From assembly GCA_002269645.1 (NCBI GenBank), contig NIVC01001803.1, positions 30,123 to 94,122 of the forward strand: 64,000 bases of DNA, in the 5' to 3' direction. The stretch is from Macrostomum lignano. Taxonomy: Eukaryota. A program made the translations under genes and the position numbers. A model generated the notes under the pieces. It was given only the letters and a program-made list of their open reading frames with translations, was not told the DNA's origin and ran no database searches. This document shows, in pieces, positions 8,684-64,000 of the stretch; position 1 is the first letter of the stretch, and each line of letters starts with the position of its first letter.

Positions 8684-9218
8684 CTGCAACAGCAGCAAAT
8701 TTGCGATTTTCTCAAATCCGAAAACTACGATTGCCAAAAACGTCTGTACAATATAATTTTTATGATAAATTTAGTAAAAACAAATTCCTTAATTATTTGA
8801 GCTGCTCGCAGATGGAGTTTCCAAGAGGACTGCAGCAGCTCTGCAACAATCAGCATTGGCGAGAGCGTATCCGACTTCTCACATGCAGCTCATTTTCCAT
8901 TTCTGCAGCATGAGTTTCCTTCCATCTCACAATGTCTCACAAAGCATTCACGTACAGCCTCCCAGTTCTCCATCTGCAGCTCAACCCACACACTCTCACT
9001 GCACACCGAGGCCCTACAGCTTCCATTCTCGACTGAGATCAACCGGCACCCTATTGACTGGGAGGCAGCCAGCCAATCACAGCTCTCGCCCATCAAGCGG
9101 TTAGCCAGAGACAAGATCAGCTGACTGGCTCTGATTGGCTGGCCTGAGACTGCAGCTCTGGCCACCCCAGCCGAATGCTGCAAAACTTGATGAACACAGC
9201 AGCGAACTGCTCACTCAC

Positions 9219-22673: not shown

Positions 22674-23048
22674 CTGCAACAATCAGCATTGGCGAGAGCG
22701 CATCCGACGTCTCACACTCCCTCTCATTTTCCATTTCTGCAGCATGAGTTTCCTTCCATCTTACAATAACAAAGCACTCACGCACAGCCTCCCAGTTCTC
22801 CATCTGCAGCACAACCCACACACTATCACTGCACACCAAGGCCCTACAGCTTCCATTCTCGACTGAGATCAACCGGCACCCCATTGGCTGGGAGGCAGCC
22901 AGCCAATCACAGCTCTCGCCCATCAAGCAGTCAGCCAGAGAGAAGCTCAGCTGACTGGCTCTGATTGGCTGGCCTGAGACTGCAGCTCTGGCCACCCCAG
23001 CCGAATGCTGCAAAACTTGCTGGACACAGCAGCGAACTGCTCACTCAC

Positions 23049-39100: not shown

Positions 39101-42100
39101 AGCAGTCTTTGGTAAGTTTTATGTTTAGAAAGTTAGGCTAACAATGCATGCACATTTTGTTACTTTCATGCCAAGAATTTCGACTTGCAATAAGAATCAG
39201 TAGTTGTTTAAACAATATCATGTGAACCGTATTTCATATTAACTTTCAACAGACTAGTGGCCCAGATTACGAGCATGGCGAAATTGCCGAGGCCTACAGC
39301 CTCCTGCGGCAGGCCGTGCATCAGGCTGGACTAGAGGTAATTTTGTGTAGCTGTCAATATATTTATTGTAAATTGTTGTTAGTCATTACTTACTGTAGCA
39401 ATTTGTGATAACTTTGTTAAGCGAGGCAGAAGTGTGGAATTGCAGGAGTGAGTAAAAGGTGCTCGCTTGAGAGCTAGGCTGTTCTCATTTATTATTTAGC
39501 ACTGAGGTGGTGGGTGTAGACAGATTCAAACGCGCGCATGGGGTGGGGTGGAATAAAATACAATCTCTAAGCCGATCAATAATAACTTCACTGCTAGTGA
39601 GTCAACACTACAGTGCATGCAACCTATAGCAAAGTTCATCGTGTCACTATGTCACATCTCCCCCCTAAGTTAACACCCTCACTGCAGCATCAATCTGTCA
39701 GGTGGTGCTCGAACTCGAGTTGGGTAGCGCCGGGGTGCCTCGTTAGCAGAGTCAGCCGTGTCTGCCTGCGGCGAGGCTGGCGTGCCGCCAGCGTCAGGTG
39801 CCGCGCAGTCCTCGGCCGGAGTTGTGCTGCTATTCGACTCGGCCAACCCAGCGGGAGCCGCCAGCAGCTGGTCAGCGTGTCGCGCTTGTACGCCGCGCCC
39901 AGAATCTACTGTGCAGTTGCGAGTGCCGGCATTGACAATGACACCTTCGGCCCAGCGGCTGCTTTCTCCTGCACGAGCAGCAGTGCTGAAATCGCGGTAG
40001 AGCACACGATCTCCAGGCTGGAACTGGCGCGCTGGCCGCTGCTGCTGAAACTGATGCTGCTGTCGCTGTTGCATGGCCGAAGTCAACGATGGTGTCAGGA
40101 GATCTAGCCGGCTGCGCAGCCGGCGGCCAATGAGCAGCTGACTCGGCGCGGTGCCACTGACGCTGTGCGGAGTGTTGCGGTAGGCCATCAGCAGTCGTTG
40201 AAGTTGCGCGTCGGAGTGACCGCACTTACTCAGATGCCGCTTCTGCACCTGGACGAAGCGCTCGGCCTGGCCGTTGGTCGCCGGGTGGAATGGCGCCGAG
40301 AAGATGTGCCGGATGCCGTTGGAACTGATGAACTCAGCGAACTCGGCTGAAGCGAATTGTGGCCCGTTGTCCGACACCAAGGTTCTCGGTAGGCCGAGAC
40401 GAGCGAAGATTTCTCGCAGGCAGCTGATCGTCGCAGTTGCAGTGGTGCTGCTCATCCTGTGCACCTCTGGCCACTTACTGTGCGCGTCGACCAGGACCAG
40501 GTAAGTGCGGCCGTCCACAGGTCCCGCGTAGTCGATGTGCAACCGCTCCCATGGCTCAGTCGGGAATGGCCAGGGCTGCACCGGGGCCTTGGATGGATCC
40601 GCCTGATTGAGCTGGCAGGTGCGACAGGCTTTTACTGCAGCTTCCAGGTCTTTGTCGATACTTGGCCACCAGACGTAGCTTCTCGCGAGGGCGCGCATGC
40701 GGCTGATGCCAGGGTGGGCTTGGTGCAGCTCGTTCAACACTTGTTGTCGCAAGGCGGCTGGCACCACAACTCGAGCGCCCCACAGCACGCAGCCCTGGTC
40801 AATGGACAGCTCGCTCTGGCGCCTGGCGAAGTCGGTCAGGTCGGCGCAGATGGTCGAACCCGTCTGCAGACAGCGCAGCACGCGCCCTAGCACCACATCC
40901 GTCCTGGTGAGCCGCGCCATCGTCGCTGCAGTGGCGGCCGAACCTGCGCCCTCGTCGATCAGCAGCGAGTTAACCGCTGTCTCCTCCTCGAACTGCTGCG
41001 GCAATGGCAGCCGGGACAGCGAGTCGCAGTTGGCGTGCTTCTCCGTCGGCCGAAACTCGAGCGCATAGTCATAGCTCGCCAGCCGGATCGCCCACCGCTG
41101 CATGCGGGCTGCAGCATGTGCCGGGATGCCTTTCCGCTCGCCCAGAAGCCCGAGTAGCGGCAGGTGATCAGTGACTATCGTGAATCTCCGGCCGTAGAGG
41201 AATTGATGGAAGCGGTGCAGCCCGAACATTATGGCCAGCGCTTCCTTGTCGAGCTGCGAGTAGCCCCGCTGTGCTGCGTTCAGGGTGCGGCTAGCGAATG
41301 CCACTGCGCAGTCTTTGTTGTCGATGCGATGGGACAACACCACGCCCACTCCGTATGGTGAAGTGTCACACTCGAGCCGCAGCGGCAGATCCGGATTGTA
41401 ATGCACCAGCACAGGTGAATGGAGCAGCAGACGCTTAGCTTCGCTGAAGGCGGTTTGCTGCGGCTTGTCCCACGTCCAACGAACGTCCTTGGCCAGCAGC
41501 TGATTGAGCGGCGCCACTACGGTGGACAGGTTAGGCAGGAACCGGCCGTACTGAGTCAGCATGCCGAGGAACGAGCGCAGCTGGCTGATATCCTTCGGCG
41601 CTGGGGCGTCTTGAATTGCGGCCACCCTGTCCGTCAGCGGGCTGAGTCCACATGCGTCAATGCGGTAACCCAGATACTCGACAGAGTCCACGAAGAACTG
41701 GCTCTTTTGCTTGTTCAGCCTGAGTCCCGAATCAAGAAGGCGCTGCAGAACTTCTTCCAGGTTTTTCTTATGTTGGTGCATCGTCTTGCCGGTGACCAGG
41801 ATGTCATCGACAAACACCTGGACAGAGTCGAGATCTCCTAGCAGAGTGTCCAGCGTCCGTTGGAAGATCGCAGTGGCGCACTTGATCCCAAAAGGCATGC
41901 GATTGAACTGGTAGAGTCCCTTCGGCGTGTTGATCGTGACGAAGGCTTTGCTGTCTTCGGCGAGCGGAAGCTGCAGGAAGGCATTGGACAGATCGAGTTT
42001 TGTCCACTTGCAGCCGCCTCCCAGCTTGGCAAACAGGTCCTCGATCTTGGGTAGAGGGTACTGCTCGGTCAGGCACGCCGGGTTGAAAGTTTGCGTATAA

Positions 42101-48100: not shown

Positions 48101-48662
48101 TTGATTTACGTGATTCACAATCGATTTCTGTGTTGAAATATCTGAACAAAACGATAAATGTACAATAACCTTTTCATTATTTGCGGGTCAAGTCCTGATA
48201 CTGTCTTTATCAAGCCACTGCACGACTGCACTGCACGAGTCAATACTTAATCCATTAGCCAATAGCCACTGCACTGCATCTTATATTACGCATCATTATC
48301 TGTATTAACTCATAATGTCGATCGTCTTCACGGATGCAGCAACGAACTCACAACCTGAGCCACCACTAGTGGTATTCTACAGCATGGCTTGGAGCAGGTG
48401 AGCCAGTGTTGATTGTGTCATTTTATCATGCTTTCCATTGTGAAGGGCACCCGGTGGAAGGGCATCCACTAACTTTAACTAAAATGCGAATGCAAGGTAG
48501 CTGAAGCGCATTATGATCTATTATAGGGTACTTAATTTTATATATTACTTGAATTAAGTAACATTTGCAAACATTTTATCCTATATTGATAAAAAATTAG
48601 GATAAACACTTGGCATGCTTTCTAAATTATTTTAGCCACATGGCATGGTACCCTATTGTAGT

Positions 48663-51600
48663 CACTCTTCCCCTGAAGTAGGATATTGGTCCATGAAGTA
48701 TACCAAGAAAGCGGTTTGTTTCCCATGGATCAGTGTCCCTACAGTAGCCCAAAACAATGTTCACTGAAATCATATCGCATTGTCTGTACACCGTACAGGT
48801 ATATTAATTAGTCCAGTACTAGCTGGCTGTTATAGTTAGTATTTACTTCACACTAGGGCCTCTGAATTGAATATTTATAGTAAAATTCAGACATGGATAT
48901 GCAGTTAAATACTTCAATAGATTCAATCCATTCGCACCTGCATATATCAACATTTGCACCTGTGTAATAACTACCTTTATATGCACCTTGACACCTTTAA
49001 TTTTTTTACCGTAAGTACTGCGAAAAAATCCATATAATAGATGAGCAAGGGGTAAAAACTATATATTCTACAGCTGTCACTTCAAAAAGCTAAAAGCACA
49101 ACAGACTTTGTTTGTCAATCAAGATTTTCAAGCCTTGTCAGTGGTAGGCTTATGAGAAGGGAAATTTTAAATCGATCTCTTCCATAGACATTTGATTTTG
49201 TTTCACAAGTTTTTGTTGGTATGTACACTGGTGTTGAGGGTTTGGCCATAGACAAAAGTCTTGAGGAGATGAGCTGACTGTCAGTGTGAAATTTATGCCT
49301 TTATATTTTTTGGCTTTCATTGCTTCTCAAAATGCCTAACAGTAGGCGAACACACGAAGAAAGTCGAAACAGTGTGTGCATTTTATGCTTTCGCAAGGGT
49401 GACCGACAATTGACTGTAAGTCTGGAAGCCTTAATCGAGTGCTATGTCCTGCCTGGATTTGCTCAACACCGAGCATTTCTGCCGTCAGGTATCTGCAACT
49501 CCTGCCGGATCAAGTTGTCATCGCAGAACAGTGCAGCACCAGCACCTCTTCCGCCTCGCTTGCCATACGAAAAAGTAATAGATGATCTGCACTACCTTCC
49601 ACCACTCACTCGTGAACGTCCTGAGTGCAGCTGCTGGATCTGCAATGTCGCCTCCAGCAGGGCTAACAAGAACGTGAATGTAGCGCACCCCTACATGTCA
49701 GAGGAGTTCAATTCAGGGGTAGCAACTCCACTTGGCCGTCCTCTGAACTGTGCACCTGGATCCGTGAAAGACAGCGTCAAACATTGCGGCACATGCTCGT
49801 CACCAGTGGCGCGGGGAGTGCGACATGAATGCGGACAAGCCGCGAAGCTGCGCTACCTCAGCACCTTGAGTCCAAGTTCAATGGAGCATGTAGCCTGCAG
49901 TTTTCTCCGCGAAAAACTAAACGCAGCAGACGTGTCTTCTTCCGGAGATGCTGCAACAGCTAGTCTGTCTTCTGGTTTCGGTGGGCATCCAATCCAAGTC
50001 CAAGCTGTTGACACATCAACCAGCCATGTCCCACAAATGTTGCACAGCACAATGAGGGCCATGAAAACTGCCTTGAACCTAAGCACCAACCAGACCATTC
50101 AAGCTGCGCAAGTGATAAGAGAGGCGTCTGGCAACAGAAAAGCAATTCAACCTGGATTGAAGGAGTTCCTGTTTTCTGAAGGCCAGAGTGTCGCTCATTT
50201 CTTTGCTGTGGAGCAGCTCCAGTTCATCTGCAAGCAACCATCTGGGCAAGTAATTTCAATTGATCGTTCAGCTGTGTTCTGTTGCAATGTGAGTGAGTTC
50301 TTGGCTTATGTTTGCAGTTTGAGAGGCATGGCTGAGATGGAACATCATCTCAAGCTTGGAATTGATGGTGGAGGGAATTCATTGAAGATTTGCATCAGCG
50401 TTACTGATAGTGATGGGCTCCCGGCGCAAGCTTCAATGCCTGGGCCATCCAATAGATTTCTCAACTCGGGGGTTAAAAAGCTTTTCGTCCTGGCCATTGT
50501 AGAGGATGTCAAAGAGTGTTACGAGAATGTCAAAACTCTATTATCCACCATGGACATCAGTTCCTTCCTATTCACTTTGGCCTGTGACTTCAAGCTAGCC
50601 AACATCATCTGTGGCATTCAAAGCCATGCTTCGACGCATCCTTGCCTTTACTGCGAGGGCAAGTCTCCATGGACCACTCCAGCACCAAGCAGAACACTTG
50701 GCTCAGTGAGGCGGCTGGCAAACGAGTTTCAGTTGGCCGGCGGACATCAGCCTGCTGCCAAACACTTTGCCAACTGTGTTCAGTCTCCACTGCTGCCTGG
50801 ACTGGATTCCACTGAACTGATTGAGTTGGTGCCACCACCTGAGCTGCACATTATGCTTGGCATTGTGAACCGTTTGCTGGATGAGCTCAACAACCGATGG
50901 GGCAATGATATGGCCTACAAGTGGGCCCATGGAGCAGGGATCTGTCGTCAGCAGTATCATGGAGGTTGCTTGGAAGGTCCAGCATGCAAGAAGCTGCTTC
51001 TAAAGGCTGGCGAGCTATGGAACATTTTACCTGCGCACCTGAAAATGTTTGCCGTTGCACTTCAGGATTTCAATGCAATTCGGCTAGCCTGCTTTGGCCA
51101 AACTCTTGCCAATGACTTTGCTTTGCATATTGCTCGATTTCAGACGACATGCCAGTTCCTCCAGCTAAATGTGACACCCAAGATGCATGCACTATTCCAC
51201 CATGTGCCAACATTCTGTTCAAAGTCTGGCAAGGCATTGGGGAGCTTTAGTGAGCAGACAGTGGAGTCAGCTCACAGTGATTTCGAGGCCACCTGGCAAA
51301 GATATCGGCGCCCTTTCAATCATCCACAGTATGCCGCAAACCTTCTTCAGGCTGTTGTGAACTATAATTCGTTTCATATTTGAACTTCTAACGTTATGGT
51401 TTGATCAACTGGACATAAACTGACTGACCTTGCCTGATTTATTTGTTTCTTCAATAGTGAGTTGCTAGTCTGTTTTAGTTGTATTGTATGGTTCTTTGTA
51501 TTGTATTGTCTTTTGTATGGTTCTATTTCTGGTTTCTATTTCTAAACAATGTTCTATTCAGCAACATCTTTCGTATACATTCAGAATACAAGCAACTTTT

Positions 51601-52004
51601 TAGACTTACTTATTATATCACTTTCAATCACTGTGGATTTTTTCGCAGTACTTTCGGTAGAAAAAATTAAAGGTGTCAAGGTGCATATAAAGGTAGTTAT
51701 TACACAGGTGCAAGTGTTGATATATGCAGGTGCAAATGGATTGAATCTATTGAAGTATTTAACTGCATATCCATGTCTGAATTTTACTATAAATATTCAA
51801 TTCAGAGGCCCTAGTGTGAAGTAAATACTAACTATAACAGCCAGCTAGTACTGGACTAATTAATATACCTATACGGTGTACAGACAATGCGATAGGATTT
51901 CAGTGAACATTGTTTTAGGCTACTATAAGGACACTGATCCATGGGAAACAAACTGCTTTCTTGGTATATTTCATGGACCAATATCCTACTTCAGGGGAAG
52001 AGTG
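48663..52004 (+). mobile_element. Complete Chapaev (CMC) DNA transposon
   Basis: About 370-bp TIRs (48663-49032 and 51634-52004) with CAC...GTG termini and a 4-bp TSD TAGT on both sides. Confidence 0.9.
49332..51383 (+). CDS. Chapaev transposase, intact ORF (about 683 aa from ATG)
   Basis: N-terminal Chapa-type zinc motif H-x7-CxxC..PSGICNSC..CxCxxC. Core motifs GIDGG, CDFK, HPCLYC, PELHIMLG, TPKMH and SEQTVESAH. Confidence 0.9.
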   Translation: MPNSRRTHEESRNSVCILCFRKGDRQLTVSLEALIECYVLPGFAQHRAFLPSGICNSCRIKLSSQNSAAPAPLPPRLPYEKVIDDLHYLPPLTRERPECSCWICNVASSRANKNVNVAHPYMSEEFNSGVATPLGRPLNCAPGSVKDSVKHCGTCSSPVARGVRHECGQAAKLRYLSTLSPSSMEHVACSFLREKLNAADVSSSGDAATASLSSGFGGHPIQVQAVDTSTSHVPQMLHSTMRAMKTALNLSTNQTIQAAQVIREASGNRKAIQPGLKEFLFSEGQSVAHFFAVEQLQFICKQPSGQVISIDRSAVFCCNVSEFLAYVCSLRGMAEMEHHLKLGIDGGGNSLKICISVTDSDGLPAQASMPGPSNRFLNSGVKKLFVLAIVEDVKECYENVKTLLSTMDISSFLFTLACDFKLANIICGIQSHASTHPCLYCEGKSPWTTPAPSRTLGSVRRLANEFQLAGGHQPAAKHFANCVQSPLLPGLDSTELIELVPPPELHIMLGIVNRLLDELNNRWGNDMAYKWAHGAGICRQQYHGGCLEGPACKKLLLKAGELWNILPAHLKMFAVALQDFNAIRLACFGQTLANDFALHIARFQTTCQFLQLNVTPKMHALFHHVPTFCSKSGKALGSFSEQTVESAHSDFEATWQRYRRPFNHPQYAANLLQAVVNYNSFHI

Positions 52005-52597: not shown

Positions 52598-53881
52598 CCT
52601 TTTCAAGCCTGAATTCCTAAATAGAAAGCTCCGTTCCTGCCGGCATGGTCAGCAGAGCTGACCATAGACTATTTCAAGTTTTCAGTGAACTGAATTGCAT
52701 TGCCACTCCTGCCGATAAGCCAGCCATCGCTGGTCTAATCTAGGGTTGAAGGAGAATGTACATTTGGAATGGGTTGCACACACGCTTATCAAAACTGTAC
52801 AAGACTGGCCATAGACAGTCCAGTTTTAGTATATTAAGGGCTGTGCCAAATTCTGTACAATTCTATTCATGTAATTCAAATCAATCCAAATATGGATATT
52901 CTGTTGACTTCCGACTCCGAAAGTGACGCTGGAATAGCGGAGAACTCCGAGTCGTCTGAGTCGGTCACTATCAGCGAAGTAGAAGACGATTGGCAGTTTG
53001 TGGAGCCAGGCGAAGACATTGTTGAAGACGGCCCCAGTTTCACTGGAATTTCGGGTGTAAACCCCAGCATTGTCCTTCCCGAAGACCGTGAAGACATCCA
53101 ATATTTTCTACGACTGTTTCTAACCGATGAGCTGCTGGATAAGATCGTGGAGTGGACAAACGCAAAAGCTTGGGCTGAGTATGAGCAGGCGACACATGAT
53201 GGAGATGTTTCGAGCTTGCTGAAGTCATGGAAGGACACAAACCGCAGTGAGATATCCAAGCTGTTGGGTATGTACCTGTTCATGGGCATCTCACGGAAGC
53301 CGGAACTGCATGATTACTGGAGCACCAGTGTCATTCACAGTACTCCGTTTTTTCAATCGCCCAATGGCTTGACCCGTGACCGATTCAAGCAGCTGCTGGC
53401 CTTCCTTCGTTTCTACGATGCACGAGCACCCGCCTCGAACGACCCACTGCACAAGATTCGGCCGCTGCTCCGTCTGGCTCAGCAGCTCTGCGCGAACGTG
53501 TACCAGCCGGAGCAGCAGGTCAGCGTCGACGAGTCCCTGATTCTGTACAAGGGGCGCCTTCAGTTTAGGCAGTACATCCCATCGAAGAGAGCCAGAGTTG
53601 GAATTAAAATGTACTGCGCCTGTGAGTCTGCATCTGGCTACCTGTATAACTTTCTAGTACATTCGACTGCTGAAGAGAACTCTCATTTTGGCGACGACCT
53701 CGGTTGTGACCAGCTGTCTCTAAGCGAGAAAATCGTAGTGCACCTTTGCAAGGACCTGCTCGGTTTCGGCTATCACCTTTTCGTCGACAAGTGGTTTGCT
53801 TCAGTACGGCTTGCGACTTTTCTGTACGAACGCAGCACACTGCTGACAGCAACTGTTCGAGCCGACCGTGGAGTGTTATAA
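52598..53881 (+). mobile_element. 3'-truncated piggyBac element with a 329-aa partial transposase (52892-53881)
   Basis: TTAA|CCTTTT 5' end. The protein has RDRFKQL..KIRPL..SVDESLILYKGR..QYIPSKR..GIKMY..FVDKWF and stops before the third catalytic Asp. No 3' TIR seen. Confidence 0.92.
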
Positions 53882-54181: not shown

Positions 54182-57100
54182 CTTGAAGAACCCAATGGCC
54201 CTAGCCGTTATGATGCCCGATGTGAAAAGGAGAAATGGGCATTGCTCAGTGAACAGCTGGCTGATGGTGTGGCAGCTTACTTTTTTATCAAAGGCAATTG
54301 CTTAATCTGTTAGGAATCAGAGGGCTTATTTCGTTGTGAAAGCTGTCACCTTCAGGTGTGTAAGACCTGTCTTGAAGCTGCTCATGGCCACAATCCACCT
54401 CATGCAGTTCGAAAGTGGAATGTAAGTAAAATTCACACCAACATGTATCTTTTATATAGCAGTGATGTGGCCGCAGCTTTCTGCTGCAAGCATAGGGCCG
54501 CAGTCACATCTTAGGCGCTGTTGTACGCTGCTAGTATCTGTAATAATAATAATTTTATAATAATTGATTACACCTGCCCAATGGGCAGATGTGCAACCGA
54601 CAGCTCAGCCGCAGCTATTGCGCGGCGCATCTGAAGGCTGCGTACGGCTGTTCAGTCCAAGGACTGGGGGTCGCCACACACACCCTCAATTACCCCAGCT
54701 AATGCTGGTACCCATTTTACAGCTGGGTAAACTGAAACAACGCAGAGTTAAGTGTCTTGCTCAAGGACACAAATTGTTGCAGAGGGATCGGGAATCGAAC
54801 CCCCGACCTTCAAGTCGTGAGTCCGACGCCCTAACCACTAGGCTACAACCCCTTACTAGGCTACAACCCCTTACTAGGCTACAACCCCTTACTAGGCTAC
54901 AACCCCTTACTAGGCTACTCCGCCATCTGTAATAGGAACTGTTCTGCTGCCTCCATGCACTCTAAGCAGCCTTCCTTGGCGCTAAGAAGTTGCACAATAT
55001 GGCGCAATCGAGTCATCATAATGAGGCTCATTAACATAAAAATTAGGAAGTTTTTCTAGCCTAGGGTTAGTTAGTGGAAGCCGCCAAATTTGGCGCTTGC
55101 CTGTACTGTTGTTGCCTGGCCTGCCGCGTACAATTGCTCAGTGTATGCAATTCTAGATAGCTGCACTCCTCCCCTTGTGCGCTCGCTGGACCCTTCCCCC
55201 TTCTGCTCTTTCGTTCCTCCGCCACCTAACGGCCGTGGACTAGACAGACAATCCACTTAACAAAAAATACCTGACTAGATAGTGAGTCCACGCACCTAAC
55301 GGCCCGCCGATAGCGGAGCCCATCCCACGCTAAAAATAGCCCGTTAACGGGACCCAGCCCACGGTGGGATGGGCTCCCTTAGAGAGGGCCAGCCCACGAG
55401 CGGAGAGGGGTGGGGTGGGGTGGGGTGAGTGTGGAACGCTAGTGCGCACTAGCGTACTAGCACTGTACTAGCAATGAAGCAAGCTAAAAACGCTGCACAT
55501 CCGGGACTCATTTCTCGTACGGTATATTAATGTATACTGGATGAAGACGGCTTTGTCTTTGGCAAGCAAACGTGGCCGGTTGGTCCTAAATTGCATTGTA
55601 ATCATTTTCTTTCTTTTATGTCTAGCTTAGCTTAGAATTGCAATATGCTACGAATCTATAGTCTTCTGTTTTTAAATTTAGTGGAAATTTGGTCAGAGAA
55701 AAATAGTACAGGCGCAAGAAACGAGGACTAGTTAGTCACCCATTTTCGTTTTGAATGTTTTTTTAGCAAAGTAAGGTACCAAGCGAGATATTTATAATTG
55801 ATAGACAGGCCAATTTCCTAATTCACGAAGTGCCAGTTTTCTAATTTCTAGATGTTTGATAAAGGCATAAAATTAATCGCCTTTGTACTTGGATTTGTCC
55901 TTGGAGGTAATATACTGCATCCGTTTGTAAATATTATGCGAAAAAGACTAATTTTATTCAAATTCAAATAATTTTAGAATTTTCGCATGAAGTTAAAACA
56001 AACTAAAAATTGAAACAAAATAAAAATTCACGCGGAAATTTAAAATTTCACATTCGTTGAATTCAAAATTAAAATATTAATCAACTCGTAGAATCGTAGG
56101 GCACTGTACACTAATTAAATTAAGTTAAGGTTGCTACATCTACATGCGATAGCAATTCCACTGTACTTTATGTCAGTACATGGGCTTTGCCCTTATTTCG
56201 TTTACTGCATAGATTTTTGTCTAGATCTTGTCTATCTCTCTAGTCATGTCTATGAGAATTATATTTTAACGTCGTAGTAGTTAGTATTCGCGCAGTAATT
56301 TTGTATAGTTTTATGCCATAGAAAATATTTATTATCTGTGTCATCGTGGTGTTATTGTTTGTATTAACTAAAAATGTTGGGCTATCTGACTAGAAATCAG
56401 ATTATCATACAAACGATAATTTTTTAAAATTTTTATTAACTTTAGAAATTGATGAACAGGCGTCGGGATTATTTTGACTAGTAAATACTAGTGACTACTC
56501 CTGGCGAGCGGTAATTCCTTTCAGTGCTTACGAGTACTAGTTATCCTTTATGATTTTTGAACACCAGTTATTTTGCTTGTTTTACAGCCTTAACTACAGC
56601 GAGTGCATGGTTCAGCAGATGCTGCGCGATATTCCTCCCCACGTTTCAATAATCGTATCTTACGACATAAGTTGCAAACTGGCTGGTTGATTCTGCGATC
56701 CAATATTAACTTTTGTCTTGCCGGTGTTGCACGTTTATGGTCACGTTCTTCTTTGTCAGTTGTTGTTCGGCATTCGTGCCACCGAGTCTGTGGGCCTGAT
56801 AGATGGCGAAAGCTTTGAGCGCATTTGGCTGCATTCCGCAGATTTGGACTTCAAGTAAAGGAGATGGTGCATGATAATCGATAATTTTCTGAATTACGTC
56901 GCTGACACTATGAACTTCGCACGCATCATGTCGATCAGTTAGTATTTTATTTGTTTGAATTAATTCGTATGTCATTGTGATATTGTATGTTCATATTTAT
57001 TATTTTTTCATATATTATCAGTCTGAATGAAAAATTGGTTTTCATCCATTTTCAGCTGCTTGGTTGCAAAGTCGCCGAAAGGTTGAAGAGATGGCATTTT

Positions 57101-57250
57101 TGCGCTTTGAGACAGAGTTCGCAAAGTTTTTGGAAGAAAGCAAAAGCACTCGTGAGTTTTTATGGGAAATCCGTTTGACTTCATGAACTTCGAGAAGGCC
57201 GGTGTGATGATGTCCATGGGCGACTTGGAGTTCCGTACGGATGTTGACTT
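54182..57250 (+). mobile_element. Decayed, intron-containing KDZ (Kyakuja-Dileera-Zisupton) transposase with an N-terminal CxC cysteine cluster
   Basis: 54182-54421: CLIC*..FRCESC...CKTC...H...PPHAVRKW. 56588-56854: VSYDISC..LPVLHVYGHVLLCQLLF..GLIDGESFERIW, the diagnostic KDZ motifs. In-frame stops are present. Confidence 0.8.
54541..54924 (-). mobile_element. tRNA-derived SINE with a CORE-like central domain and (ATT)n tail
   Basis: A box TAGCCTAGTGG and B box GGTTCGATTCC. GTGTCCTTGAGCAAGACACTTAAC..CAGTTTACCCAGCTGTAAAATGGG resembles the MIR/CORE block. An 18-bp piece of the head is tandemly amplified. Confidence 0.85.
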
Positions 57251-57447
57251 CTGAGGTGACCACTAAAAAGCAGCCTGGCACATTGTAGATTGCGTAGAAA
57301 TCATTGTCTCTTGGACAATGTTTCCTACGGCACGTATTGGCCAGCAACCTATAGGTTTTGGGTCACCGACCTATAGAATGAGTGACCCCTGAACGCTAAA
57401 GCGGCCTTCTCAGGGCCACCAAATTATTGATGCTTGCGCTAGTCAAA

Positions 57448-57507
57448 TCTTTTAACTCCGCCATTGCCGGTCCCCAGCCCCCGGAATGAAAAAAGAGGAG
57501 AGAAAGG
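57448..57507 (+). ncRNA. Twister ribozyme, type P1 (copy 1, partly degenerate)
   Basis: TCTTT-TAA-CTCC-GC-CATTG-CCGG-TCCCCAGC-CC-CCGG-AATGAAAAA-AGAG-GAGA-G-AAAGG follows the P1/L1/P2/T2/P4/T1 layout. It has two extra C, one P2 mismatch and GAGA instead of GAGG. Confidence 0.7.
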
Positions 57508-58803
57508 TTCGGGCTGGGGAAGGGAAAGGGTTCGGGCTTGGCCTGCTAGGAGCTGCATTGGAACAGCTGAATATAACGATACTGCGAGTGCATAAAGCTG
57601 CGTGTCCTGTATTGGTGCATTGAGGTGCAAATAAATATTCTCTCCTCATTCTACCCCTTCTCGCCTACATTCTACCCTTCTCTCCTCCATTCTTCTACCC
57701 CTCCTCCCTTAGTGAGGGACACAGAAAATAGAGGCACGCAAAGCTGAAACTATACTATTGCAAAACTTGTAATTAAGAGTTTTAGTATTCGTGTATTACG
57801 AGTTTGCAACGTACACAATAGAAATTTACTAAAAATACAATATTTTTGCTCATTTATTTTTTCATGCTGAGTAAAATAAGCTGAGTTCGCTACTTGAAGT
57901 AGGAGATGCGCGACACGCAGGAATAGAAATAAAATGTAAGTCTAAAGACTAAGGAGTACTGTAAGCGGACGCGCCACTCACAAAATGCAATACAATATGG
58001 CATCACTAATTACTTGTTGATGACAAATCCAAAAAACACGCACCAACGATGTTGTTTTATCATGCACAAAGCATATGTACAGTAGCCTTGTTTTTCTATT
58101 ATTTTTTACCTCAGGCTGGAGCGGAGATGAGTAGAGATAAGCGGAGGTGGATCGTTGGTGGCTAGGTGGGGAGTTGGGTGGCTAGATGGGGAGTTGGGTG
58201 GCTAGGTGGGCAGTTGGCTAGATGTTGGCTAGTTTTTTTATTTTTTGTGGGATTATCATTTCTGTTCACAAAATGATTCCAGGGCTGTCTATTGTCGCGC
58301 CAGTCTGCTACTGAGGTGGCAGAAGATGAATGGTGCCCCTTGCACCATTAAGGCTGCTGCCGAAAGTTGCTGGCGAATACGTGCCGTAGGAAACATTGTC
58401 CAAGAGACAATGATTTCTACGCAATCTGCAATGGGCCAGGCTGCTTTTGGGGGCAAACTTCATGGTGCAAGGGGCCAGCTGTGCCAGCTCCAGCGCCAGC
58501 TCGTGTTCTACCTCCGCGCCGCCTAAGCCCGGTTTCGACTGGCAACGCTGCGCAGTGCGGACCGTTTTTGCAAAATATCGTTGGTCAGTTCGTTTGGCTG
58601 CCAAACGTGCCGCAACTGGCAAAGTGCCAAGCCTAGCCACGCTGGCCAGTCTGGCGGCTTGCAGAAGTGGACCACTGCCACTGCACTTATGCAGTCGTGG
58701 TGTGCGTAAGGTCTTGGTCACCGACCTATAAATGAGTGACCCCTGAACGACAAAACAGCCCTTCTCAGGGCCACCAAATTTGTGATTCTTGCGTTTAGTC
58801 AAA

Positions 58804-58860
58804 TCTTTTAATTCCGCTATTCCCGGTCCCCAGCCCGGATGAAAAAGGAGGAGGAAAAGA
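58804..58860 (+). ncRNA. Twister ribozyme, type P1 (copy 2, near canonical)
   Basis: TCTTT-TAA-TTCC-GC-TATTC-CCGG-TCCCCAGC-CCGG-ATGAAAAA-GGAG-GAGG-A-AAAGA aligns element by element with the rice Osa-1-4 twister as I recall it. All stems can pair. Predicted cleavage is at T58809/A58810. Confidence 0.85.
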
Positions 58861-59639
58861 AAATATACACATGCTCACGTTCGTGTCACTGTTTTTCTGT
58901 TTTCATTATTGCTAAAACTGTCTTGCCATTTTTCACTTGAAATGTTTTATGATGCTTCTTGTCTTTCTTATTTTCCGCCTAATAGTATTTTGACATGGTG
59001 GACATTGTGTGTAGTATTTACAACTTTGCTTAAAACATGTATATTAGAGGCTATAATAAAAAAAATCAACTATACATTTTTAATTGAATTTCATATCTAC
59101 GCATAGCGTTCTAAATTTATTTTTGTACATTGTTGTTATACTGTGTAGTTTTGATTTGGACCAATCTTTAAATGTTAATCAACATGACTTGGACAGCCAT
59201 TTCTAAAAACAAGCGAAACAAGCGAACCTAATAAAAACAGATTCATAGAAGCGGACAATAACTTCCACTCCAGTTTTGTCAAACATTATAGGAAAGTAAA
59301 ACTTCAAGGTTAAGGGAATAAGTTGCAAGTTTTACAAGAATGTCAATTGGTATCTGAATCTGACTTACTATTTCTTCCCTATTCTAAAAATGCCTACTAT
59401 GTATGCCAGTTTTGGGCCACCATTAAAACTTGTGGTGGCCTAAAGGCCCGCAGCAACTAAATAAGTTTGAATATAGTTCTAAGTAACTATATAGTTCAAG
59501 ATAAAAAACAAAAGTTGCCTTGTCAAGTTTTTTGTTCCAAAAAAGCAAGGCAACAGGCTCAGGCTAGCTTGAGTAGACTTCTGGCAGCAAAGCCAATAGG
59601 CAGTAGCCAGTTTTCTTATGGCTATATTACCCTAGATAG

Positions 59640-60460
59640 AAGATCCAGCAGTGTCAGTTACACAGCTGTTAGGGACTAGTTATGGTGCTGGAACTCTAGC
59701 CATAACCATCTTTGCAGCTCTGCTTGCAGCTGCTGAGCTGCATGACTACGCATGTATATAACTTTGGCGGATTGGTTTTTACCAACATTAAAACTGATGT
59801 TAAAATGTACATAGTAAGAGTGGGGTGGCTATATACTAGACGACAAAAATTATGGGGTAGCTGACCAAGGAGTGAGGGGTGACGGGTGAGTGAGTCATCA
59901 TGTGGAATCATGCACATGCTTTGTACATTTTAACATTGGTTTTAACGTTGGTAAAAATTATCAGCCAAAGTTATTTTCATGACAAGGCATATGCCTATAT
60001 TCAATCAGTAATGGACAATGGTAATGGCTAGAGTTCTGGCACCGGAACCCGTTTTCTAGCAGTTATGGATCCAGCAGTGCCATATAGAAGCATATAATTC
60101 AATACTACTAAGAATAATTTTAAGAAATCTGTTCCATCTCTATAATAATGGCACTGCCAGATCCATAGCCGTTAGAAAATGGGTTCCGGTGCTGGAACTC
60201 TAGGAATCTAGCCATTGCCTATGAGCTATACTCAGTTATAACAGTTATAACCTGTTAAATATGATACAGCCACTGGAAATGACTAGTTCTAGCACCAGAA
60301 CCAGTTCTCTAACAGCTGTCACAGTGTAAATGGCAATGGAAGCCTAACTTTAATGTATAAACATCTTATAATGATGGCTGGCAATGCTTCATTTATAATT
60401 TCTTATTTTAATTTTGCAAATGTTCATTTTCTAACAGCTATGAATCTAGCAGTAGCAGTG
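59640..60460. repeat. Cluster of short inverted and direct repeats (MITE-like family)
   Basis: About 57-bp imperfect inverted pair at 60029-60085 and 60149-60204, with partial copies near 59640, 60280 and 60430. Confidence 0.6.
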
Positions 60461-60580
60461 CCATTTAAAAGCATATAATTTTTTTAAAAACTCCTAAGCT
60501 AAGATTAATAAGTTAAGAATATATTGTCAATTGTCAAAAGTTCTAATCAAGCATTAGTTGGAATTAAAAGTGTAACAAGC

Positions 60581-61168
60581 GTTATTCTTCTGTCTATGAA
60601 ATTATTCTTAAAGCTGCCACCAAAGTTGTGGTAGGGACCAAAGTTGTGGTAGGGGTGACTTCTTTCTTGATAATATCCCACTAATGCCACCAAGTTGTGA
60701 CAGGTTTTTTGCCTCTATACTAATATTTCTTAGTAATTTCTTGGAATTTTTATTTAAATATAGCGGTTTCAGTAGCGTACGGATAGCGTCTTATGTATTA
60801 GTCTGGTAGCGTCCTATATATTAGTCTGGTAGCGTCTTATGTATTAGTCTGGTAGCGTCTTATATATTAGTCTGGTTATTCTTCTGTCTATGAAATTATT
60901 CTTAAAGCTGCCACCAAAGTTGTGGTAGGGACCAAAGTTGTGGTAGGGGTGACTTCTTTCTTGATAATATCCCACTAATGCCACCAAGTTGTGACAGGTT
61001 TTTTGCCTCTATACTAATATTTCTTAGTAATTTCTTGGAATTTTTATTTAAATATAGCGGTTTCAGTAGCGTACGGATAGCGTCTTATGTATTAGTCTGG
61101 TAGCGTCCTATATATTAGTCTGGTAGCGTCTTATGTATTAGTCTGGTAGCGTCTTATATATTAGTCTG
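60581..61168. repeat. Apparently perfect 294-bp tandem duplication containing a 22-bp subrepeat
   Basis: 60581-60874 repeats at 60875-61168; the subrepeat TATTAGTCTGGTAGCGTCTTAT continues to about 61225. Confidence 0.9.
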
Positions 61169-61310
61169 GTAGCGTCTTATGTATTAGTCTGGTATCGTCT
61201 TATGTATGTCTGGTAGCGTCTTATGTATGGCCTGAGCAGTCTAGTACAGGTACATGAACTTCAATAATGAGTCCTAGTCGGGTGTTCCCGAGATTAGAGG
61301 GTCACAGCAC

Positions 61311-61312
<2 letters not shown>

Positions 61313-61385
<73 letters not shown>
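61313..61385. repeat. (CT)n microsatellite
   Basis: Directly visible. Confidence 0.98.
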
Positions 61386-64000
61386 CGAATCTTTCTTGTA
61401 TATTTCCCCATCCTTTCTCTCAGTACTTTTCTCAGTACTTACTTAGATGGTAATTGTTTCAAGTGTTAACCATAACCATAAGTGTTAACTGTCTCGCTAG
61501 ACGCTTGTCACCATAACAATAACAACTGCCCATATTTTAATGGCAATGGCAATGCAAGATCCATATCCATAGCTGTTAGTAGGGACTTCAATGAGATAAA
61601 TATAAATATGACCAAATGAAAAAATGTGAAAAAAAACTTTTTTCTAGCTTAAAAATAACCTAGATAACAAAGAATAGAAATAAGTGGTAGAAAAAGACAT
61701 ATTCTATTGGAAAAATACTTTCCAATAATATATCATATGGATTAATTGATTAAATTCTTGCAATTAAGAAAATTGTTTTAGTCAATGTATTTTGCCTATA
61801 AAAATTTAATGCAATTATTTTGTTAAGCACCATGGGTTTTTATTTTTCCATTTAATTTCTTATGCAAAAATGATTACAAATTTATATTTTGCAAAAAAGT
61901 TTTGCCTAGCTCTTGGTGCTCACTAAAATAAGTGTATCAATAAATTACAAACGAATTCCCATAAGAAATCATATTTTAAAATGAGGTGAAAGAGGCAGCT
62001 CTAACTTTTTTTTATTTTCTAATTGGAAAACAATGCAGAGATAAGTTAGATAAAATTGCATGTTACTACACAATGGCACACTGATAAAAAGATAGCTTTT
62101 TGTATATTCATAGGCATAATATACATATAGCTATTTTTTCTTCTATAGCCTAAAAATAAATTAAATTATTTTTAATAGAAGTAACACTCAATCTTAAGTA
62201 CAAGTTTAATTTAAAATAAGTACAAAAAACTCTGACTTTTTACAAATCAGTCAATCTATTTTTACATCCAATTTGTGATTGATGATTATTATGCATGGCA
62301 GCCGTGCCTATAAGCTCCCATATTAGAGACATGGCCACCCACAGTGTCGTGTGAACCCATTCAATATTAATGATACAGCTGCCATGCAAGTTTCATTGAC
62401 ATGGTGGTCATGTCTCTAATAGTGACTGGCGACCATGTCTATAAGTTTTTGCCTATAGATTTATCAATGAATGATTTATCAATGAATATGTGAATTTATC
62501 TCACTTATCTCTTCAGATTTCCATGGATTCATTCATTGAAGAAAACACGCTGTATTATACAGCGCTAGAGGTTAGTTTCTTCTTGACGATTACCTTCTCT
62601 GTTCATTTTTATTGATATTGAAATCTTATACTGTAAAATAAGAGGTGACTTGGCGACTTGGTGACTTGGCTTGTGCGCTGTGGGTGGAGTTGCATGTGTA
62701 ATGTACTCTATGCACCTTGTGCCATCGCTTAATCCCCCTTAACTCACTTGTCAAGGGTGTGCTTCATCACTTAGAAACTTGCGTTGACTTGTAGTCCCCT
62801 AATCCTTCGCACAATCATTACATGCACACTTAGGCATCGACTGAAAATATATAGTGCGTCGTTTCTTTACAGAAATCCTCCATATAAGTGAGTAAAAACA
62901 ACTTGACTCCCCCAAACTCTGAATGCAGCGTTTCATTCCTAAGTGTGGAATGACTTTCTGTTACTCGAATTTGCATTTAGCGCTTGCATCTTTCAGCAGC
63001 TTAAGTTGCGTGTTCAGGCCCTAAATCTTATATAACTAAAGTAGCAACCCCCTCCTGACTACCCCCTAGAAGTTCTACTTGAATGCAGGGAAAGCTTGCT
63101 GTCTGCTGGGGGAATGCTTGCTGTCTGCTGTGGAAATTTGCTGTCTACTGGGGGATGCTTGCTGAAGATAGTTACGACAATGCAGCAACCCTTGACAACA
63201 ATACGACAAGCCTTGAGAGTTAAAATGTATGTTTAATATTTGCCCACCCTGAAAGGGTTGCTCAGATTGTAGTTCTTTATTTCCGCAGTTTGCCGAGCCC
63301 GGAGTCCAAGTCCGCGGACAGTGGCGCGCCGCCCGGACACGGCGCCGGCCCCAGCACGGATGATCATGAGGAGGACTAGCTTCTAAAGTCCTAGCTACAC
63401 TAGCTGCAATTGTCAGGAAAATCCTGAATTGTCAAAATGAAACATTTAATTTCGTTCAAAGCATTTTACTTAACATAAGTAGCAAGTTAAAAACATCTTT
63501 TGCTGGCCAAGCCAGAACTTCATACGAATAAAGTAGCATTTTACCATCTTTGGATTGACAAAAACGCGTCTTCAATTTTTTCATTATAAAAATGCCAAAG
63601 ATTTCTGAAGAATATAACTGAATTACATTCCGGAAAAGGAAATAGAGATATTTTTAGCTTCTTGGCACAATAATTGTACTAAAATATCACAGTAAAAATG
63701 GGCTTCAGTAAGCAGATTTTTCTAGGAACAGGATTAGATATTTAGACCGCAATGACTCATAGAGATGCTGAAAAAAACATCTTTAAATCCAGAAGAAGCT
63801 CTAGCAAAGAAGCATATAGCTGATGAAAAAATGATAGCTGATTTAGATGCGATTCCAACCAGTGACTTGTCTGTGAAAGAGAGACTCATTCGAATCTAGT
63901 AAAACGTAAGTAGTAGTATGATATAAGAGGCTGCGCCACACTTAATGCTCGGGCGCATTTCGCGCCAGCTCGCTGGATGACTCAGCCCCTTATATCATAC

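What the first reader, a model, noticed from the sequence alone, without database searches (positions are those of the whole stretch)
57361..58860. Pair of twister ribozymes ending two copies of an uncharacterised repeat: a possible twister-based retrozyme or circular-RNA retroposon
Seen: two ~150-bp direct repeats (57361-57507 and about 58711-58860), each ending in a motif with the full type-P1 twister layout. Stem differences between the copies keep most pairing (P2 CTCC/AGAG vs TTCC/GGAG; P1' AAAGG vs AAAGA). Predicted cleavage sites (T57453/A57454 and T58809/A58810) are 1356 nt apart on the same strand. Homology between the copies crosses the cleavage site and stops at the ribozyme 3' end. 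Established: twisters self-cleave at this U-A step, and retrozymes and Penelope-like elements use hammerhead ribozymes in repeats to release monomeric, circularising RNAs. Inference: this is an analogous mobile RNA system built on twister, copied into DNA from an uncleaved or re-ligated RNA. Caveats: both copies have CA where the reference loop has AA, and the two copies could be independent neighbouring insertions rather than the ends of one element.
Basis: partly seen in the sequence, partly recalled or inferred. Interest (0 to 1): 0.88.

Follow-up and report, generated by a model that had tools for sequence, protein, structure and literature searches.

The report
Two decaying twister ribozyme repeats
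Two neighbouring copies of a 154-bp repeat in a flatworm (Macrostomum lignano) genome each end in a genuine twister-type self-cutting RNA motif, one probably still able to cut and one probably dead, but nothing testable here shows that they form a circular-RNA mobile element.

Summary
Two same-strand repeats (57353-57506 and 58709-58859) are 85% identical (blastn E 3e-41). Each ends in a type-P1 twister that lacks the optional P3 stem. The predicted U|A cleavage sites are 1356 nt apart.

Both twisters fall below Rfam's gathering score (43.7 and 32.9 bits against 67.2). Their window-wide E-values are still 2.4e-6 and 0.003. Fully canonical P3-less phage twisters score only 49.5-53 bits on the same model.

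Copy 2 keeps the catalytic A and G and all four indispensable nucleotides, so it is plausibly active. Copy 1 has G48A at an indispensable position, a P2 mismatch, a 2-nt loop insertion and a competing downstream hairpin, so it is probably dead. The "CA for AA" loop change recurs in bona fide phage twisters and is reported as tolerated.

The window is Macrostomum lignano. Twisters in flatworm repeats and retrotransposons are already known from Schistosoma.

The retrozyme reading is not supported by any hallmark I could test:
- No target-site duplications, primer-binding site or polypurine tract.
- No tandem unit and no RT/endonuclease ORF.
- No further copy in about 150 kb of M. lignano DNA.
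- No extra conservation of the ribozyme relative to the rest of the repeat.
- No viroid-like folding of the 1356-nt unit.

It is not excluded. Genome-wide copy number and RNA ends could not be examined.

The parts
57353..57506 (+). Repeat copy 1 (154 nt): about 96 nt of non-coding upstream part plus a twister
   Evidence: blastn 85.3% identity to 58709-58859, E 2.9e-41. Alignments.
57449..57506 (+). Twister copy 1, degraded. Layout: P1 CUUU/AAAG, U57453|A57454 cleavage step, P2 CUCC/AGAG with a C.A mismatch, L4 UCCCCAGC plus 2 extra C, general-base G57498. A57501 replaces the indispensable G48.
   Evidence: RF03160 32.9 bits, E 0.003 window-wide. G48 is indispensable in Osa-1-4 (PMC5113685). 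With 40 nt of downstream sequence the minimum-energy fold pairs 57471-57480 with 57511-57520 instead of forming the twister.
58709..58859 (+). Repeat copy 2 (151 nt)
58805..58859 (+). Twister copy 2, near canonical and P3-less. Layout: P1 CUUU/AAAG, U58809|A58810, P2 UUCC/GGAG, G58816-C58817 pairing G58833-C58834 (pseudoknot T2/PK1), P4 CCGG/CCGG, L4 UCCCCAGC, general base G58851, then A58852, G58853, G58854, and A58855 in place of G49.
   Evidence: RF03160 43.7 bits, E 2.4e-6 window-wide. Canonical P3-less phage twisters score 49.5-53 bits. All four indispensable positions G13, G30, A46 and G48 are kept (mapping against PMC5113685).
57507..58708 (.). 1202-nt intervening sequence: non-coding, with two short tandem arrays (57638-57693, 58157-217), an AT-rich stretch and a 141-nt hairpin. 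No copy elsewhere in the DNA examined.
57398..57442 (+). Histone-3'-stem-loop-like hairpin inside repeat copy 1 (weak; one C lost from the 5' arm)
   Evidence: RF00032 15.9 bits
58752..58796 (+). Histone-3'-stem-loop-like hairpin inside repeat copy 2: (A)GCCCU UCUC AGGGC(C) ACCA, 38 nt before the cleavage site
   Evidence: RF00032 21.5 bits. E is 0.006 in the 1.8-kb search but 0.22 window-wide, so it is not significant on its own.
57266..57348 (+). 83-nt hairpin-forming element abutting the 5' end of repeat copy 1. Its inverted twin lies at 58366-58448.
   Evidence: 96% complementary inverted repeat I1; fold z -2.4
58335..58475 (.). 141-nt near-perfect hairpin containing the inverted 83-nt element, 233 nt upstream of repeat copy 2
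   Evidence: dG -78.9 kcal/mol, z -8.65, 0 of 200 shuffles as stable

Best explanation
These are two old, diverged copies of one roughly 154-bp non-coding repeat of Macrostomum lignano. Its last 55-58 nt are a P3-less type-P1 twister self-cleaving ribozyme. I read them as relics of a ribozyme-carrying repetitive element, of the kind already known to litter flatworm genomes.

Inferred mechanism: if the + strand is transcribed, copy 2 should cut itself between U58809 and A58810. That would leave upstream RNA ending in a 2',3'-cyclic phosphate and downstream RNA starting with the folded ribozyme. Copy 1 has most likely lost activity.

Inferred origin: the two copies share both boundaries and are the only ones in about 150 kb of M. 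lignano DNA examined. They therefore probably arose in one event. That event could be terminal repeats of a single roughly 1.5-kb insertion. It could equally be a local DNA duplication and rearrangement, which also left the inverted 83-nt pair. They have since drifted neutrally.

Shown: the repeats, the twister anatomy and the state of each key nucleotide. Inferred: self-cleavage, origin in one event, and neutrality.
For: Repeat pair: (85%, E 3e-41).

Twister identity: (E 2.4e-6 and 0.003). The calibration shows that canonical P3-less twisters also miss the gathering score.

The P2 helix CUCC/GGAG and the GC...CCGG...GGAG GAGGG layout match the Schistosoma mansoni twisters tabulated in PMC8501958.

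Copy 2 keeps A (general acid), G45 (general base), G13, G30, A46 and G48. Its deviations are C15U in the variable L2, A28C, and G49A at the end of pseudoknot PK2. A-to-C at the A.A contact and terminal C.A mismatches are reported as tolerated in natural twisters (PMC11662667). The same L4 C variant occurs in at least 8 phage twisters, two of which pass the Twister-P5 gathering score.

Copy 1 has G48A (any substitution there gave relative activity <0.2 in Osa-1-4), a P2 C.A mismatch, a 2-nt L4 insertion and a competing hairpin.

Where the copies differ, one or the other always carries the consensus base (GCC, GGAG, GAGGG). This is consistent with descent from a canonical ancestor.

Divergence is equal inside and outside the ribozyme.

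The organism is M. lignano.
Against: Only two sequences are available, so neither family membership nor neutrality can be established.

No second copy was seen elsewhere, so calling it a repetitive element rests on analogy.

Cleavage activity is predicted from mutational data on other twisters (Osa-1-4 and natural pools), not measured.

The conserved part lies upstream of the ribozyme. That is the opposite of the only functionally characterised flatworm arrangement (Perere-3).
Confidence: 0.55

Rival explanations
1. First reader's model. The two repeats are the ends of one twister-based, retrozyme-like non-autonomous retroelement. Read-through transcripts are cut at both twisters. The 1356-nt RNA is ligated into a circle and copied back into DNA over more than one turn, which creates the terminal redundancy.
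For: Two same-strand ribozymes sit in direct repeats that flank a non-coding core. This is the general layout of plant LTR retrozymes (PMC7761336).

The repeat ends exactly at the ribozyme's 3' end and crosses the cleavage site. That needs an uncleaved, religated or circular template if the copy went through RNA.

The pair is isolated in about 150 kb, which argues for a single origin.
Against: No TSD, and no PBS or PPT.

No tandem units, and the 1356-nt spacing is far from the 150-300 bp of metazoan retrozymes.

No other copy in the DNA examined.

Copy 1 is mutated at an indispensable G.

The ribozyme is not better conserved than its flanks.

The circular fold z-score is only -1.4 without the local hairpin.

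The 83-nt inverted pair points to DNA-level rearrangement at this locus.
Confidence: 0.13
2. The twisters are the 5' processing ribozymes of RTE/Perere-3-type LINEs, as in Schistosoma. The conserved 100 nt upstream would be the 3' tail of a head-to-tail upstream copy. The LINE bodies would have been lost.
For: This is the only experimentally supported role of flatworm twisters (PMC8501958; PMC7761336). The P2/L1 sequences resemble the Schistosoma type.
Against: No APE or RT domain occurs in any + frame from 57400 to 64000, nor in the other window ORFs scanned.

Homology stops at the ribozyme's 3' end in both copies, whereas a LINE body should follow.

The sequence just upstream of the cleavage site is conserved rather than a variable target or TSD.
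Confidence: 0.1
3. A purely local DNA duplication of a single ribozyme-bearing segment, possibly 83-nt hairpin plus repeat (57266-57506), with later inversion and insertion. No RNA-mediated mobility is involved in making the pair.
For: The 83-nt element abuts copy 1 and recurs inverted 260 nt upstream of copy 2. Its divergence is not significantly different from that of the repeat (Fisher p 0.08). There are no TSDs. Neither the repeat nor the 83-nt element is seen elsewhere.
Against: The remaining flanks show no duplicated sequence. A simple tandem duplication would have copied the spacer too. This model does not explain why the repeat ends exactly at the ribozyme boundary.
Confidence: 0.17
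4. A cellular or element-encoded 3'-end module. A histone-type stem-loop is followed by a twister that cuts 38 nt downstream, giving a non-polyadenylated, stem-loop-terminated RNA.
For: RF00032 matches lie at the same place in both copies. Combining the two copies gives a perfect GGCCCU/AGGGCC stem with a UCUC loop and an ACCA tail. A similar motif occurs in another M. lignano contig (L005 21300-21346, 28.8 bits, E 1.4e-4).
Against: The window-wide E-value is 0.22. No histone or other ORF lies upstream. The L005 motif has no twister after it and no ORF before it. Both copies here carry stem defects.
Confidence: 0.03
5. Chance resemblance: not twister-derived at all.
For: Neither hit reaches Rfam's gathering score. 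The minimum free energies are not better than shuffles.
Against: E 2.4e-6 window-wide. The match is full-length, with every core element in order. Canonical P3-less twisters also fall below the gathering score.
Confidence: 0.02

Closest known systems
Type-P1 twister ribozymes without P3/P5, e.g. Oryza sativa Osa-1-4 (Rfam RF03160)
   Same: Same order and spacing of P1, the UAA cleavage loop, P2, GC(C), a 3-5 nt L2, P4 CCGG, the 8-nt L4, CCGG, the A-rich L2 strand, P2', GAGGx and P1'. The catalytic A and G are present in both copies.
   Different: L4 has C for the first A (A28C). Copy 2 also has C15U and G49A. Copy 1 has G48A, a P2 mismatch and 2 extra nt in L4. Scores are 43.7 and 32.9 bits, against 49.5-53 for canonical P3-less examples.
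Schistosoma mansoni twisters / T-variants at the 5' end of Perere-3 (RTE) LINEs (Liu et al. 2021, PMC8501958)
   Same: Flatworm host. P2 CUCC/GGAG, the CCGG...CCGG P4 and the GGAG-GAGGG 3' strand are shared. Both are associated with repeated, non-genic DNA.
   Different: Schistosoma twisters carry a P3 stem, start the element at the cleavage site with variable target sequence upstream, and are followed by APE/RT ORFs. Here P3 is absent, the conserved sequence is upstream, and nothing conserved or coding follows.
Plant LTR retrozymes (hammerhead ribozymes in ~350-bp LTRs; Cervera et al. 2016, PMC4918200; review PMC7761336)
   Same: Two same-strand self-cleaving ribozymes in direct repeats flank a non-coding core of about 1 kb.
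   Different: The ribozyme class is twister, not hammerhead. The repeats are 154 bp. No 4-bp TSD, tRNA-Met PBS or PPT is present. There is no evidence of copies or circles.
Metazoan non-LTR retrozymes and schistosome Sm-alpha SINE-like hammerhead repeats
   Same: Animal, and in the schistosome case flatworm, short non-coding units in which conserved sequence precedes a self-cleaving ribozyme (PMC6765202).
   Different: Those are tandem arrays of 150-400-bp units with type I hammerheads, and Sm-alpha has a pol III promoter. Here only two units exist, 1356 nt apart, with unrelated sequence between them. I recognised no A or B boxes.
Phage twisters with the L4 UCCCCAGC variant (IMG/VR contigs L008, L012, L021, L024, L025)
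   Same: Identical CCGGUCCCCAGCCCGG core. This shows the C variant is a recurrent natural form.
   Different: Their context is bacterial or phage, next to hammerhead, pistol and RAGATH-28 RNAs. Their PK2 (GAGGG) is fully canonical.

Membership tests
Twister ribozyme, type P1 (RF03160) | Covariance-model score at or above Rfam's gathering score (67.2 bits) | tested here: not met
   43.7 and 32.9 bits. Canonical P3-less phage twisters also fail at 49.5-53 bits, so the threshold mainly penalises the missing optional P3. Window-wide E-values are 2.4e-6 and 0.003.
Twister ribozyme, type P1 (RF03160) | Helices P1, P2 and P4 with a U-A cleavage step one nucleotide 3' of P1 | tested here: met
   Copy 2: P1 4-5 bp, P2 4 bp including one U.G, P4 4 bp. 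Copy 1: the same, but with one C.A mismatch in P2.
Twister ribozyme, type P1 (RF03160) | Two pseudoknots: GC of L2 with GC of L4, and CCC(A) of L4 with (A)GGG of the 3' L1 strand | tested here: inconclusive
   The GC/GC pseudoknot is intact in both copies. In the second pseudoknot, copy 2 has two G-C pairs plus a terminal C.A and the A28C contact. Copy 1 has a central C.A mismatch from G48A (sequence; rules).
Twister ribozyme, type P1 (RF03160) | Indispensable nucleotides G13, G30, A46 and G48, plus general acid A and general base G45 (Osa-1-4 numbering) | tested here: inconclusive
   Copy 2 has all of them (G58816, G58833, A58852, G58854, A58810, G58851). Copy 1 has A57501 in place of G48; the others are present.
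Twister ribozyme, type P1 (RF03160) | Site-specific self-cleavage | not testable with these tools
   Needs in vitro transcription or RNA end mapping.
LTR retrozyme (plant type) | Hammerhead ribozyme inside each long terminal repeat | tested here: not met
   The ribozyme is a twister. There is no hammerhead hit in 57200-59000 at E<=10. Only the layout of a ribozyme in each direct repeat is analogous.
LTR retrozyme (plant type) | 4-bp target-site duplication flanking the element | tested here: not met
   No direct repeat of 5 nt or more lies adjacent to the boundaries, and the flanking 4-mers differ (CTAT against AAAA).
LTR retrozyme (plant type) | tRNA primer-binding site after the 5' repeat and a polypurine tract before the 3' repeat | tested here: not met
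   57507 onward reads GTTCGGGCTGGGG, with no TGG-type PBS. 58680-58708 reads ...CAGTCGTGGTGTGCGTA and is not purine-rich.
LTR retrozyme (plant type) | Multi-copy family expressed as circular RNA | not testable with these tools
   No access to the whole M. lignano genome or its RNA-seq. There are 0 further copies in 62 + 87 kb.
Metazoan non-LTR retrozyme | Tandem arrays of 150-300(400)-bp units, each with a ribozyme | tested here: not met
   Only two ribozymes, 1356 nt apart. The sequence between them and after them is not repeated.
Perere-3/RTE LINE with 5' twister | APE and RT ORF downstream of the ribozyme | tested here: not met
   No Pfam family at E<=1 in the three + frames of 57400-64000.
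Perere-3/RTE LINE with 5' twister | Element starts at the cleavage site; upstream sequence is unrelated target or TSD | tested here: not met
   About 96 nt upstream of the cleavage site are 90% identical between the copies, and nothing downstream of the ribozyme is.
Histone 3' stem-loop (RF00032) | Score at or above gathering (34 bits), downstream of a histone ORF | tested here: not met
   21.5 and 15.9 bits, window-wide E 0.22, no histone ORF upstream.

The most novel reading that the evidence does not exclude
The pair is the footprint of a twister-based, retrozyme-like element: direct repeats carrying twisters that release a roughly 1.36-kb RNA able to circularise. This would be the first case of a circular-RNA retroelement built on a ribozyme other than the hammerhead, found in an early-branching flatworm.
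Probability: 0.12. Interest if true: 0.8.

Novelty: new member of a known kind. Interest (0 to 1): 0.35.

Why it matters
Twisters are abundant in flatworm genomes. Their only demonstrated role there is 5' processing of an RTE-type LINE in Schistosoma. This locus adds a free-living, experimentally tractable flatworm (M. lignano) as a host. It also shows a different arrangement: a P3-less twister at the 3' end of a short repeat, present as a direct pair. If genome-wide analysis showed this to be a family with paired or tandem ribozymes and circular RNAs, the retrozyme principle would extend beyond hammerheads. As it stands, the locus is most simply a pair of decaying ribozyme relics. It is of modest interest, mainly as a lead for a genome-wide search.

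Tried and rejected
1. Looking for more copies through predicted proteins. The minus-strand ORF over repeat 2 (58311-58874) gave no hit at E<=10. Exact look-ups of ORFs over either copy found nothing.

2. Sampling other M. lignano DNA. L001, L002, L003 and L005 (87 kb from GCA_002269645.1) contain no copy of the repeat, the 83-nt element or the spacer, and no twister. L003 shares only a 3.3-kb transposon with the window, so the window is not contig NIVC01000718.1.

3. Looking for the allelic or homeologous locus through the piggyBac-like ORF. The best M. lignano hit is only 51% identical.

4. Metagenome pattern scan (stem-loop plus twister core). One hit in a GC-rich bacterial coding region, with no twister there; I judged it chance.

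5. Extending the repeat upstream after excising the 83-nt element. No further homology.

6. TSD search for each copy, for the composite and for the 83-nt elements. Nothing adjacent to any boundary.

7. RT/APE search on the + strand downstream, upstream and in other window ORFs. The only finds were an LTR-element RNase H fragment, DDE transposases, and a KDZ transposase remnant upstream.

8. Viroid-like folding of the 1356-nt unit. z is -4.5, but it is driven entirely by the 141-nt hairpin; without it z is -1.4.

9. Histone stem-loop idea. Not significant window-wide. The L005 look-alike has no ORF or twister nearby. Its similarity to the repeat is marginal (nhmmer E 0.014; local alignment within the shuffle range).

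10. Literature. No paper in the searchable library links Macrostomum with ribozymes or describes a twister retrozyme.
Full report
**What is there.** Bases 57353-57506 and 58709-58859 are direct repeats on the + strand. They are 85.3% identical over 156 aligned columns (blastn E 2.9e-41; repeat families D2-D4 and D7). They are the only two copies in the window (nhmmer --max).

Homology begins at AGGT(Y)TTGG and ends at the last base of ...GAAAG. It does not continue on either side, even after excising the 83-nt element that abuts copy 1. The region has no convincing ORF. No Pfam domain appears in any + frame from 57400 to the window end.

**Are the 3' ends twisters?** At Rfam's gathering thresholds only a tRNA is reported in the window. 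With E-value reporting, RF03160 (type-P1 twister) matches 58805-58859 at 43.7 bits and 57449-57506 at 32.9 bits. Both matches are full length. In a whole-window search their E-values are 2.4e-6 and 0.003, and they are the top non-tRNA hits.

Both copies lack the optional P3 stem, which the Rfam model expects. As a calibration I fetched phage contigs that contain the same CCGGUCCCCAGCCCGG core. Their fully canonical P3-less type-P1 twisters sit next to hammerhead, pistol and RAGATH-28 RNAs. They score only 49.5-53 bits, and one with a short P3 scores 61.1. Missing the 67.2-bit threshold is therefore expected for this architecture. Copy 2 is about 6 bits and copy 1 about 17-20 bits below a clean P3-less twister.

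**State of each ribozyme.** I use Osa-1-4 numbering (Kobori and Yokobayashi 2016, PMC5113685).

Copy 2 reads U6|A7 A8, P2 UUCC, G13 C14 U15, AUU, P4 CCCGG, L4 U C C C C28 A29 G30 C31, CCGG, AUGAAAAA, P2' GGAG, G45 A46 G47 G48 A49, P1' AAAG.
- The general acid A (A58810) and the general base G (G58851) are kept.
- All four positions where any substitution abolished activity (G13, G30, A46, G48) are kept.
- Its deviations are C15U, in the variable L2; A28C; and G49A, a terminal C.A in the longer pseudoknot.
- McKinley et al. 2024 (PMC11662667) found A-to-C at the trans A.A contact statistically indistinguishable from controls. C.A mismatches were among the better tolerated. Two imperfections in that pseudoknot lowered the mean fraction cleaved from 0.76 to 0.55.

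Copy 1 has A57501 at G48, an indispensable position. It also has a C.A mismatch in P2 and two extra C in L4. With 40 nt of downstream sequence, its minimum-energy fold pairs CCCCAGCCC (57471-57480) with GGGCUGGGG (57511-57520) instead of forming the twister.

I therefore rate copy 2 as plausibly active (about 0.6) and copy 1 as probably inactive (about 0.2 active). Both figures are inference, not measurement.

**The CA caveat.** The same variant occurs in at least eight phage twisters. Two of them exceed the Twister-P5 gathering score (L021 54.4 bits, L012 43.9 bits). The literature cited above also reports the change as tolerated. It is a recurrent natural variant, not a disqualifier.

**Evolution of the pair.** Where the two copies differ in the ribozyme, one or the other carries the consensus base: GCC against GCU, GGAG against AGAG, and GAGAG against GAGGA, both one step from GAGGG. 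Both are therefore consistent with descent from a canonical twister that already had A28C.

The stem differences are all one-sided, so there is no compensatory covariation. Ungapped identity is 87.3% in the ribozyme and 90.4% in the upstream 96 nt (Fisher p 0.59). The ribozyme has thus not been preserved better than its surroundings since the copies separated.

**Organism and known context.** A 3.3-kb TIR transposon in the window is 99.8% identical to one in Macrostomum lignano contig NIVC01000718.1, and its ORF matches BOX15_Mlig011119g7. The window is therefore M. lignano, though not that contig.

In flatworms, twisters are already known in large numbers. Liu et al. 2021 (PMC8501958) showed that Schistosoma mansoni twisters sit at the 5' end of Perere-3 (RTE) LINEs. 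There the element starts at the cleavage site, TSDs abut it, and APE/RT ORFs follow. The same association was noted for the RTE superfamily generally (PMC7761336). The P2 helix (CUCC/GGAG) and the 3' strand of copy 1 match the Schistosoma sequences.

**Testing the mobile-element readings.**

Retrozyme, LTR type (defined):
- No TSD at the outer boundaries.
- No TGG-type PBS after repeat 1 and no polypurine tract before repeat 2.

Retrozyme, metazoan type:
- That type requires tandem 150-300-bp units. Here there are only two ribozymes, 1356 nt apart, and neither the spacer nor the flanks are repeated.

RTE/Perere-3 type:
- No APE/RT downstream.
- The conserved sequence is upstream of, not downstream of, the cleavage site.

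SINE-like single insertions:
- No TSDs for either copy.
- ARAGORN finds no tRNA in the repeats, and I recognised no A or B boxes by eye.

Copy number:
- None of the repeat, the 83-nt element or the spacer occurs in 87 kb of other M. lignano DNA.
- The Rfam scans of that DNA found no twister.
- With zero further copies in about 150 kb, two independent insertions 1.4 kb apart in the same orientation are unlikely (inference). A single origin for the pair is more probable.

Circular RNA:
- The putative 1356-nt circle folds with z -4.5 against dinucleotide shuffles. This is entirely due to one 141-nt hairpin; without it z is -1.4. There is no viroid-like global self-pairing.

**DNA-level rearrangement at the locus.** An 83-nt hairpin-forming element lies directly 5' of repeat 1 (57266-57348). 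It recurs inverted at 58366-58448 with 96% identity. There it forms the core of a 141-nt near-perfect hairpin (dG -78.9 kcal/mol, z -8.65). Its divergence is not significantly lower than that of the repeats (p 0.08). The original duplicated segment may therefore have been hairpin plus repeat. This favours a local duplication and inversion history at least as much as an RNA-mediated one.

**Histone-like stem-loop.** Each repeat holds a match to RF00032, 38 nt before the cleavage site (21.5 and 15.9 bits). Combining the two copies gives a perfect GGCCCU/AGGGCC stem with a UCUC loop and an ACCA tail. The window-wide E-value is 0.22 and no histone ORF lies upstream.

A similar motif in another M. 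lignano contig (L005 21300-21346, 28.8 bits) has neither an ORF before it nor a twister after it. I treat this as an unexplained lead, not a finding.

**Verdict.** These are real twister-derived motifs in a direct repeat pair. The best explanation (0.55) is a pair of old, drifting relics of a twister-bearing repeat. Copy 2 is possibly still self-cleaving and copy 1 is probably dead.

The retrozyme-like reading (0.13) fails every hallmark I could test, but it cannot be excluded without the genome and RNA data. Twisters in flatworm repeats are a known kind. The 3'-terminal position in a short repeat, and the pairing, are the only unusual aspects.

Noticed in passing
window 57266-57348 and 58366-58448; hairpin 58335-58475: An 83-nt hairpin-forming element is present twice in inverted orientation (96% identity). 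The right copy is the core of a 141-nt near-perfect hairpin (dG -78.9 kcal/mol, z -8.65). The left copy is flanked by CTA on both sides. Neither copy is found in 87 kb of other M. lignano DNA. It could be a MITE-like foldback or a small-RNA precursor.
   Followed up: partly
window 57398-57442 and 58752-58796; L005 21300-21346: Histone-3'-stem-loop-like hairpins (RF00032; 15.9, 21.5 and 28.8 bits) occur in non-histone contexts in M. lignano DNA. The two in the window sit 38 nt upstream of the twister cleavage sites.
   Followed up: partly
window 57503-57541: Right after twister copy 1 there is a roughly 21-nt tandem duplication, AAAGG(G)TTCGGGCT(G/T)GG. It contains a partial tRNA B-box-like GGTTCGGGC and is complementary to the ribozyme's L4/P4 strand.
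   Followed up: partly
window 56592-56846 (+): A remnant of a KDZ (Kyakuja-Dileera-Zisupton) DNA-transposase domain (PF18758, E 3.6e-12, interrupted by stops) lies about 500-750 nt upstream of repeat copy 1.
   Followed up: no
window 48662-52004: A 3.3-kb DNA transposon with terminal inverted repeats of about 370 bp encodes a 687-aa ORF with no Pfam domain. It is 99.8% identical to a copy in M. lignano contig NIVC01000718.1, so it was recently active.
   Followed up: partly
window 54779-54918 (-): A tRNA-Val(CAC) gene whose first 16-18 nt are tandemly repeated 4.6 times (18-nt unit, 100% identical) immediately upstream of the gene.
   Followed up: no
window 39679-43635 (-): An uninterrupted 1318-aa ATG-to-stop ORF that I read from its sequence as the gag-pol of an LTR retrotransposon; I did not scan it against Pfam. 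No identical protein is on record in the collection. An RNase H-like fragment of another retroelement (PF17917) lies at 13164-13619.
   Followed up: partly
window 52838-53878 (+) and 27158-27902 (+): A piggyBac-type transposase fragment (PF13843, E 8e-57) and mariner/DDE_3-type transposase fragments. The closest annotated M. lignano piggyBac protein is only 51% identical.
   Followed up: partly
window 3900-30100: A cluster of paralogous ORFs whose sequences look like protein-kinase domains (3905-4681, 5261-6019, 19742-20515, 28306-28935) and ankyrin repeats (9215-9856, 23045-23725); I did not scan them against Pfam. They are interleaved with long 15-43-nt tandem arrays that stay open as repetitive ORFs.
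   Followed up: no
window 60581-61170: A perfect two-copy 294-bp tandem repeat containing internal 18- and 23-nt arrays, in the AT-rich region downstream of copy 2. Several foldback inverted repeats lie at 59679-60203.
   Followed up: no
L008, L014, L024, L025, L028, L038, L012, L021 (IMG/VR phage contigs): Phage twisters carrying the L4 UCCCCAGC variant sit within a few kb of type II hammerhead, pistol and RAGATH-28 RNAs. The canonical type-P1 examples I scanned (in L008, L024 and L025) fall below Rfam's RF03160 gathering score at 49.5-61.1 bits.
   Followed up: partly
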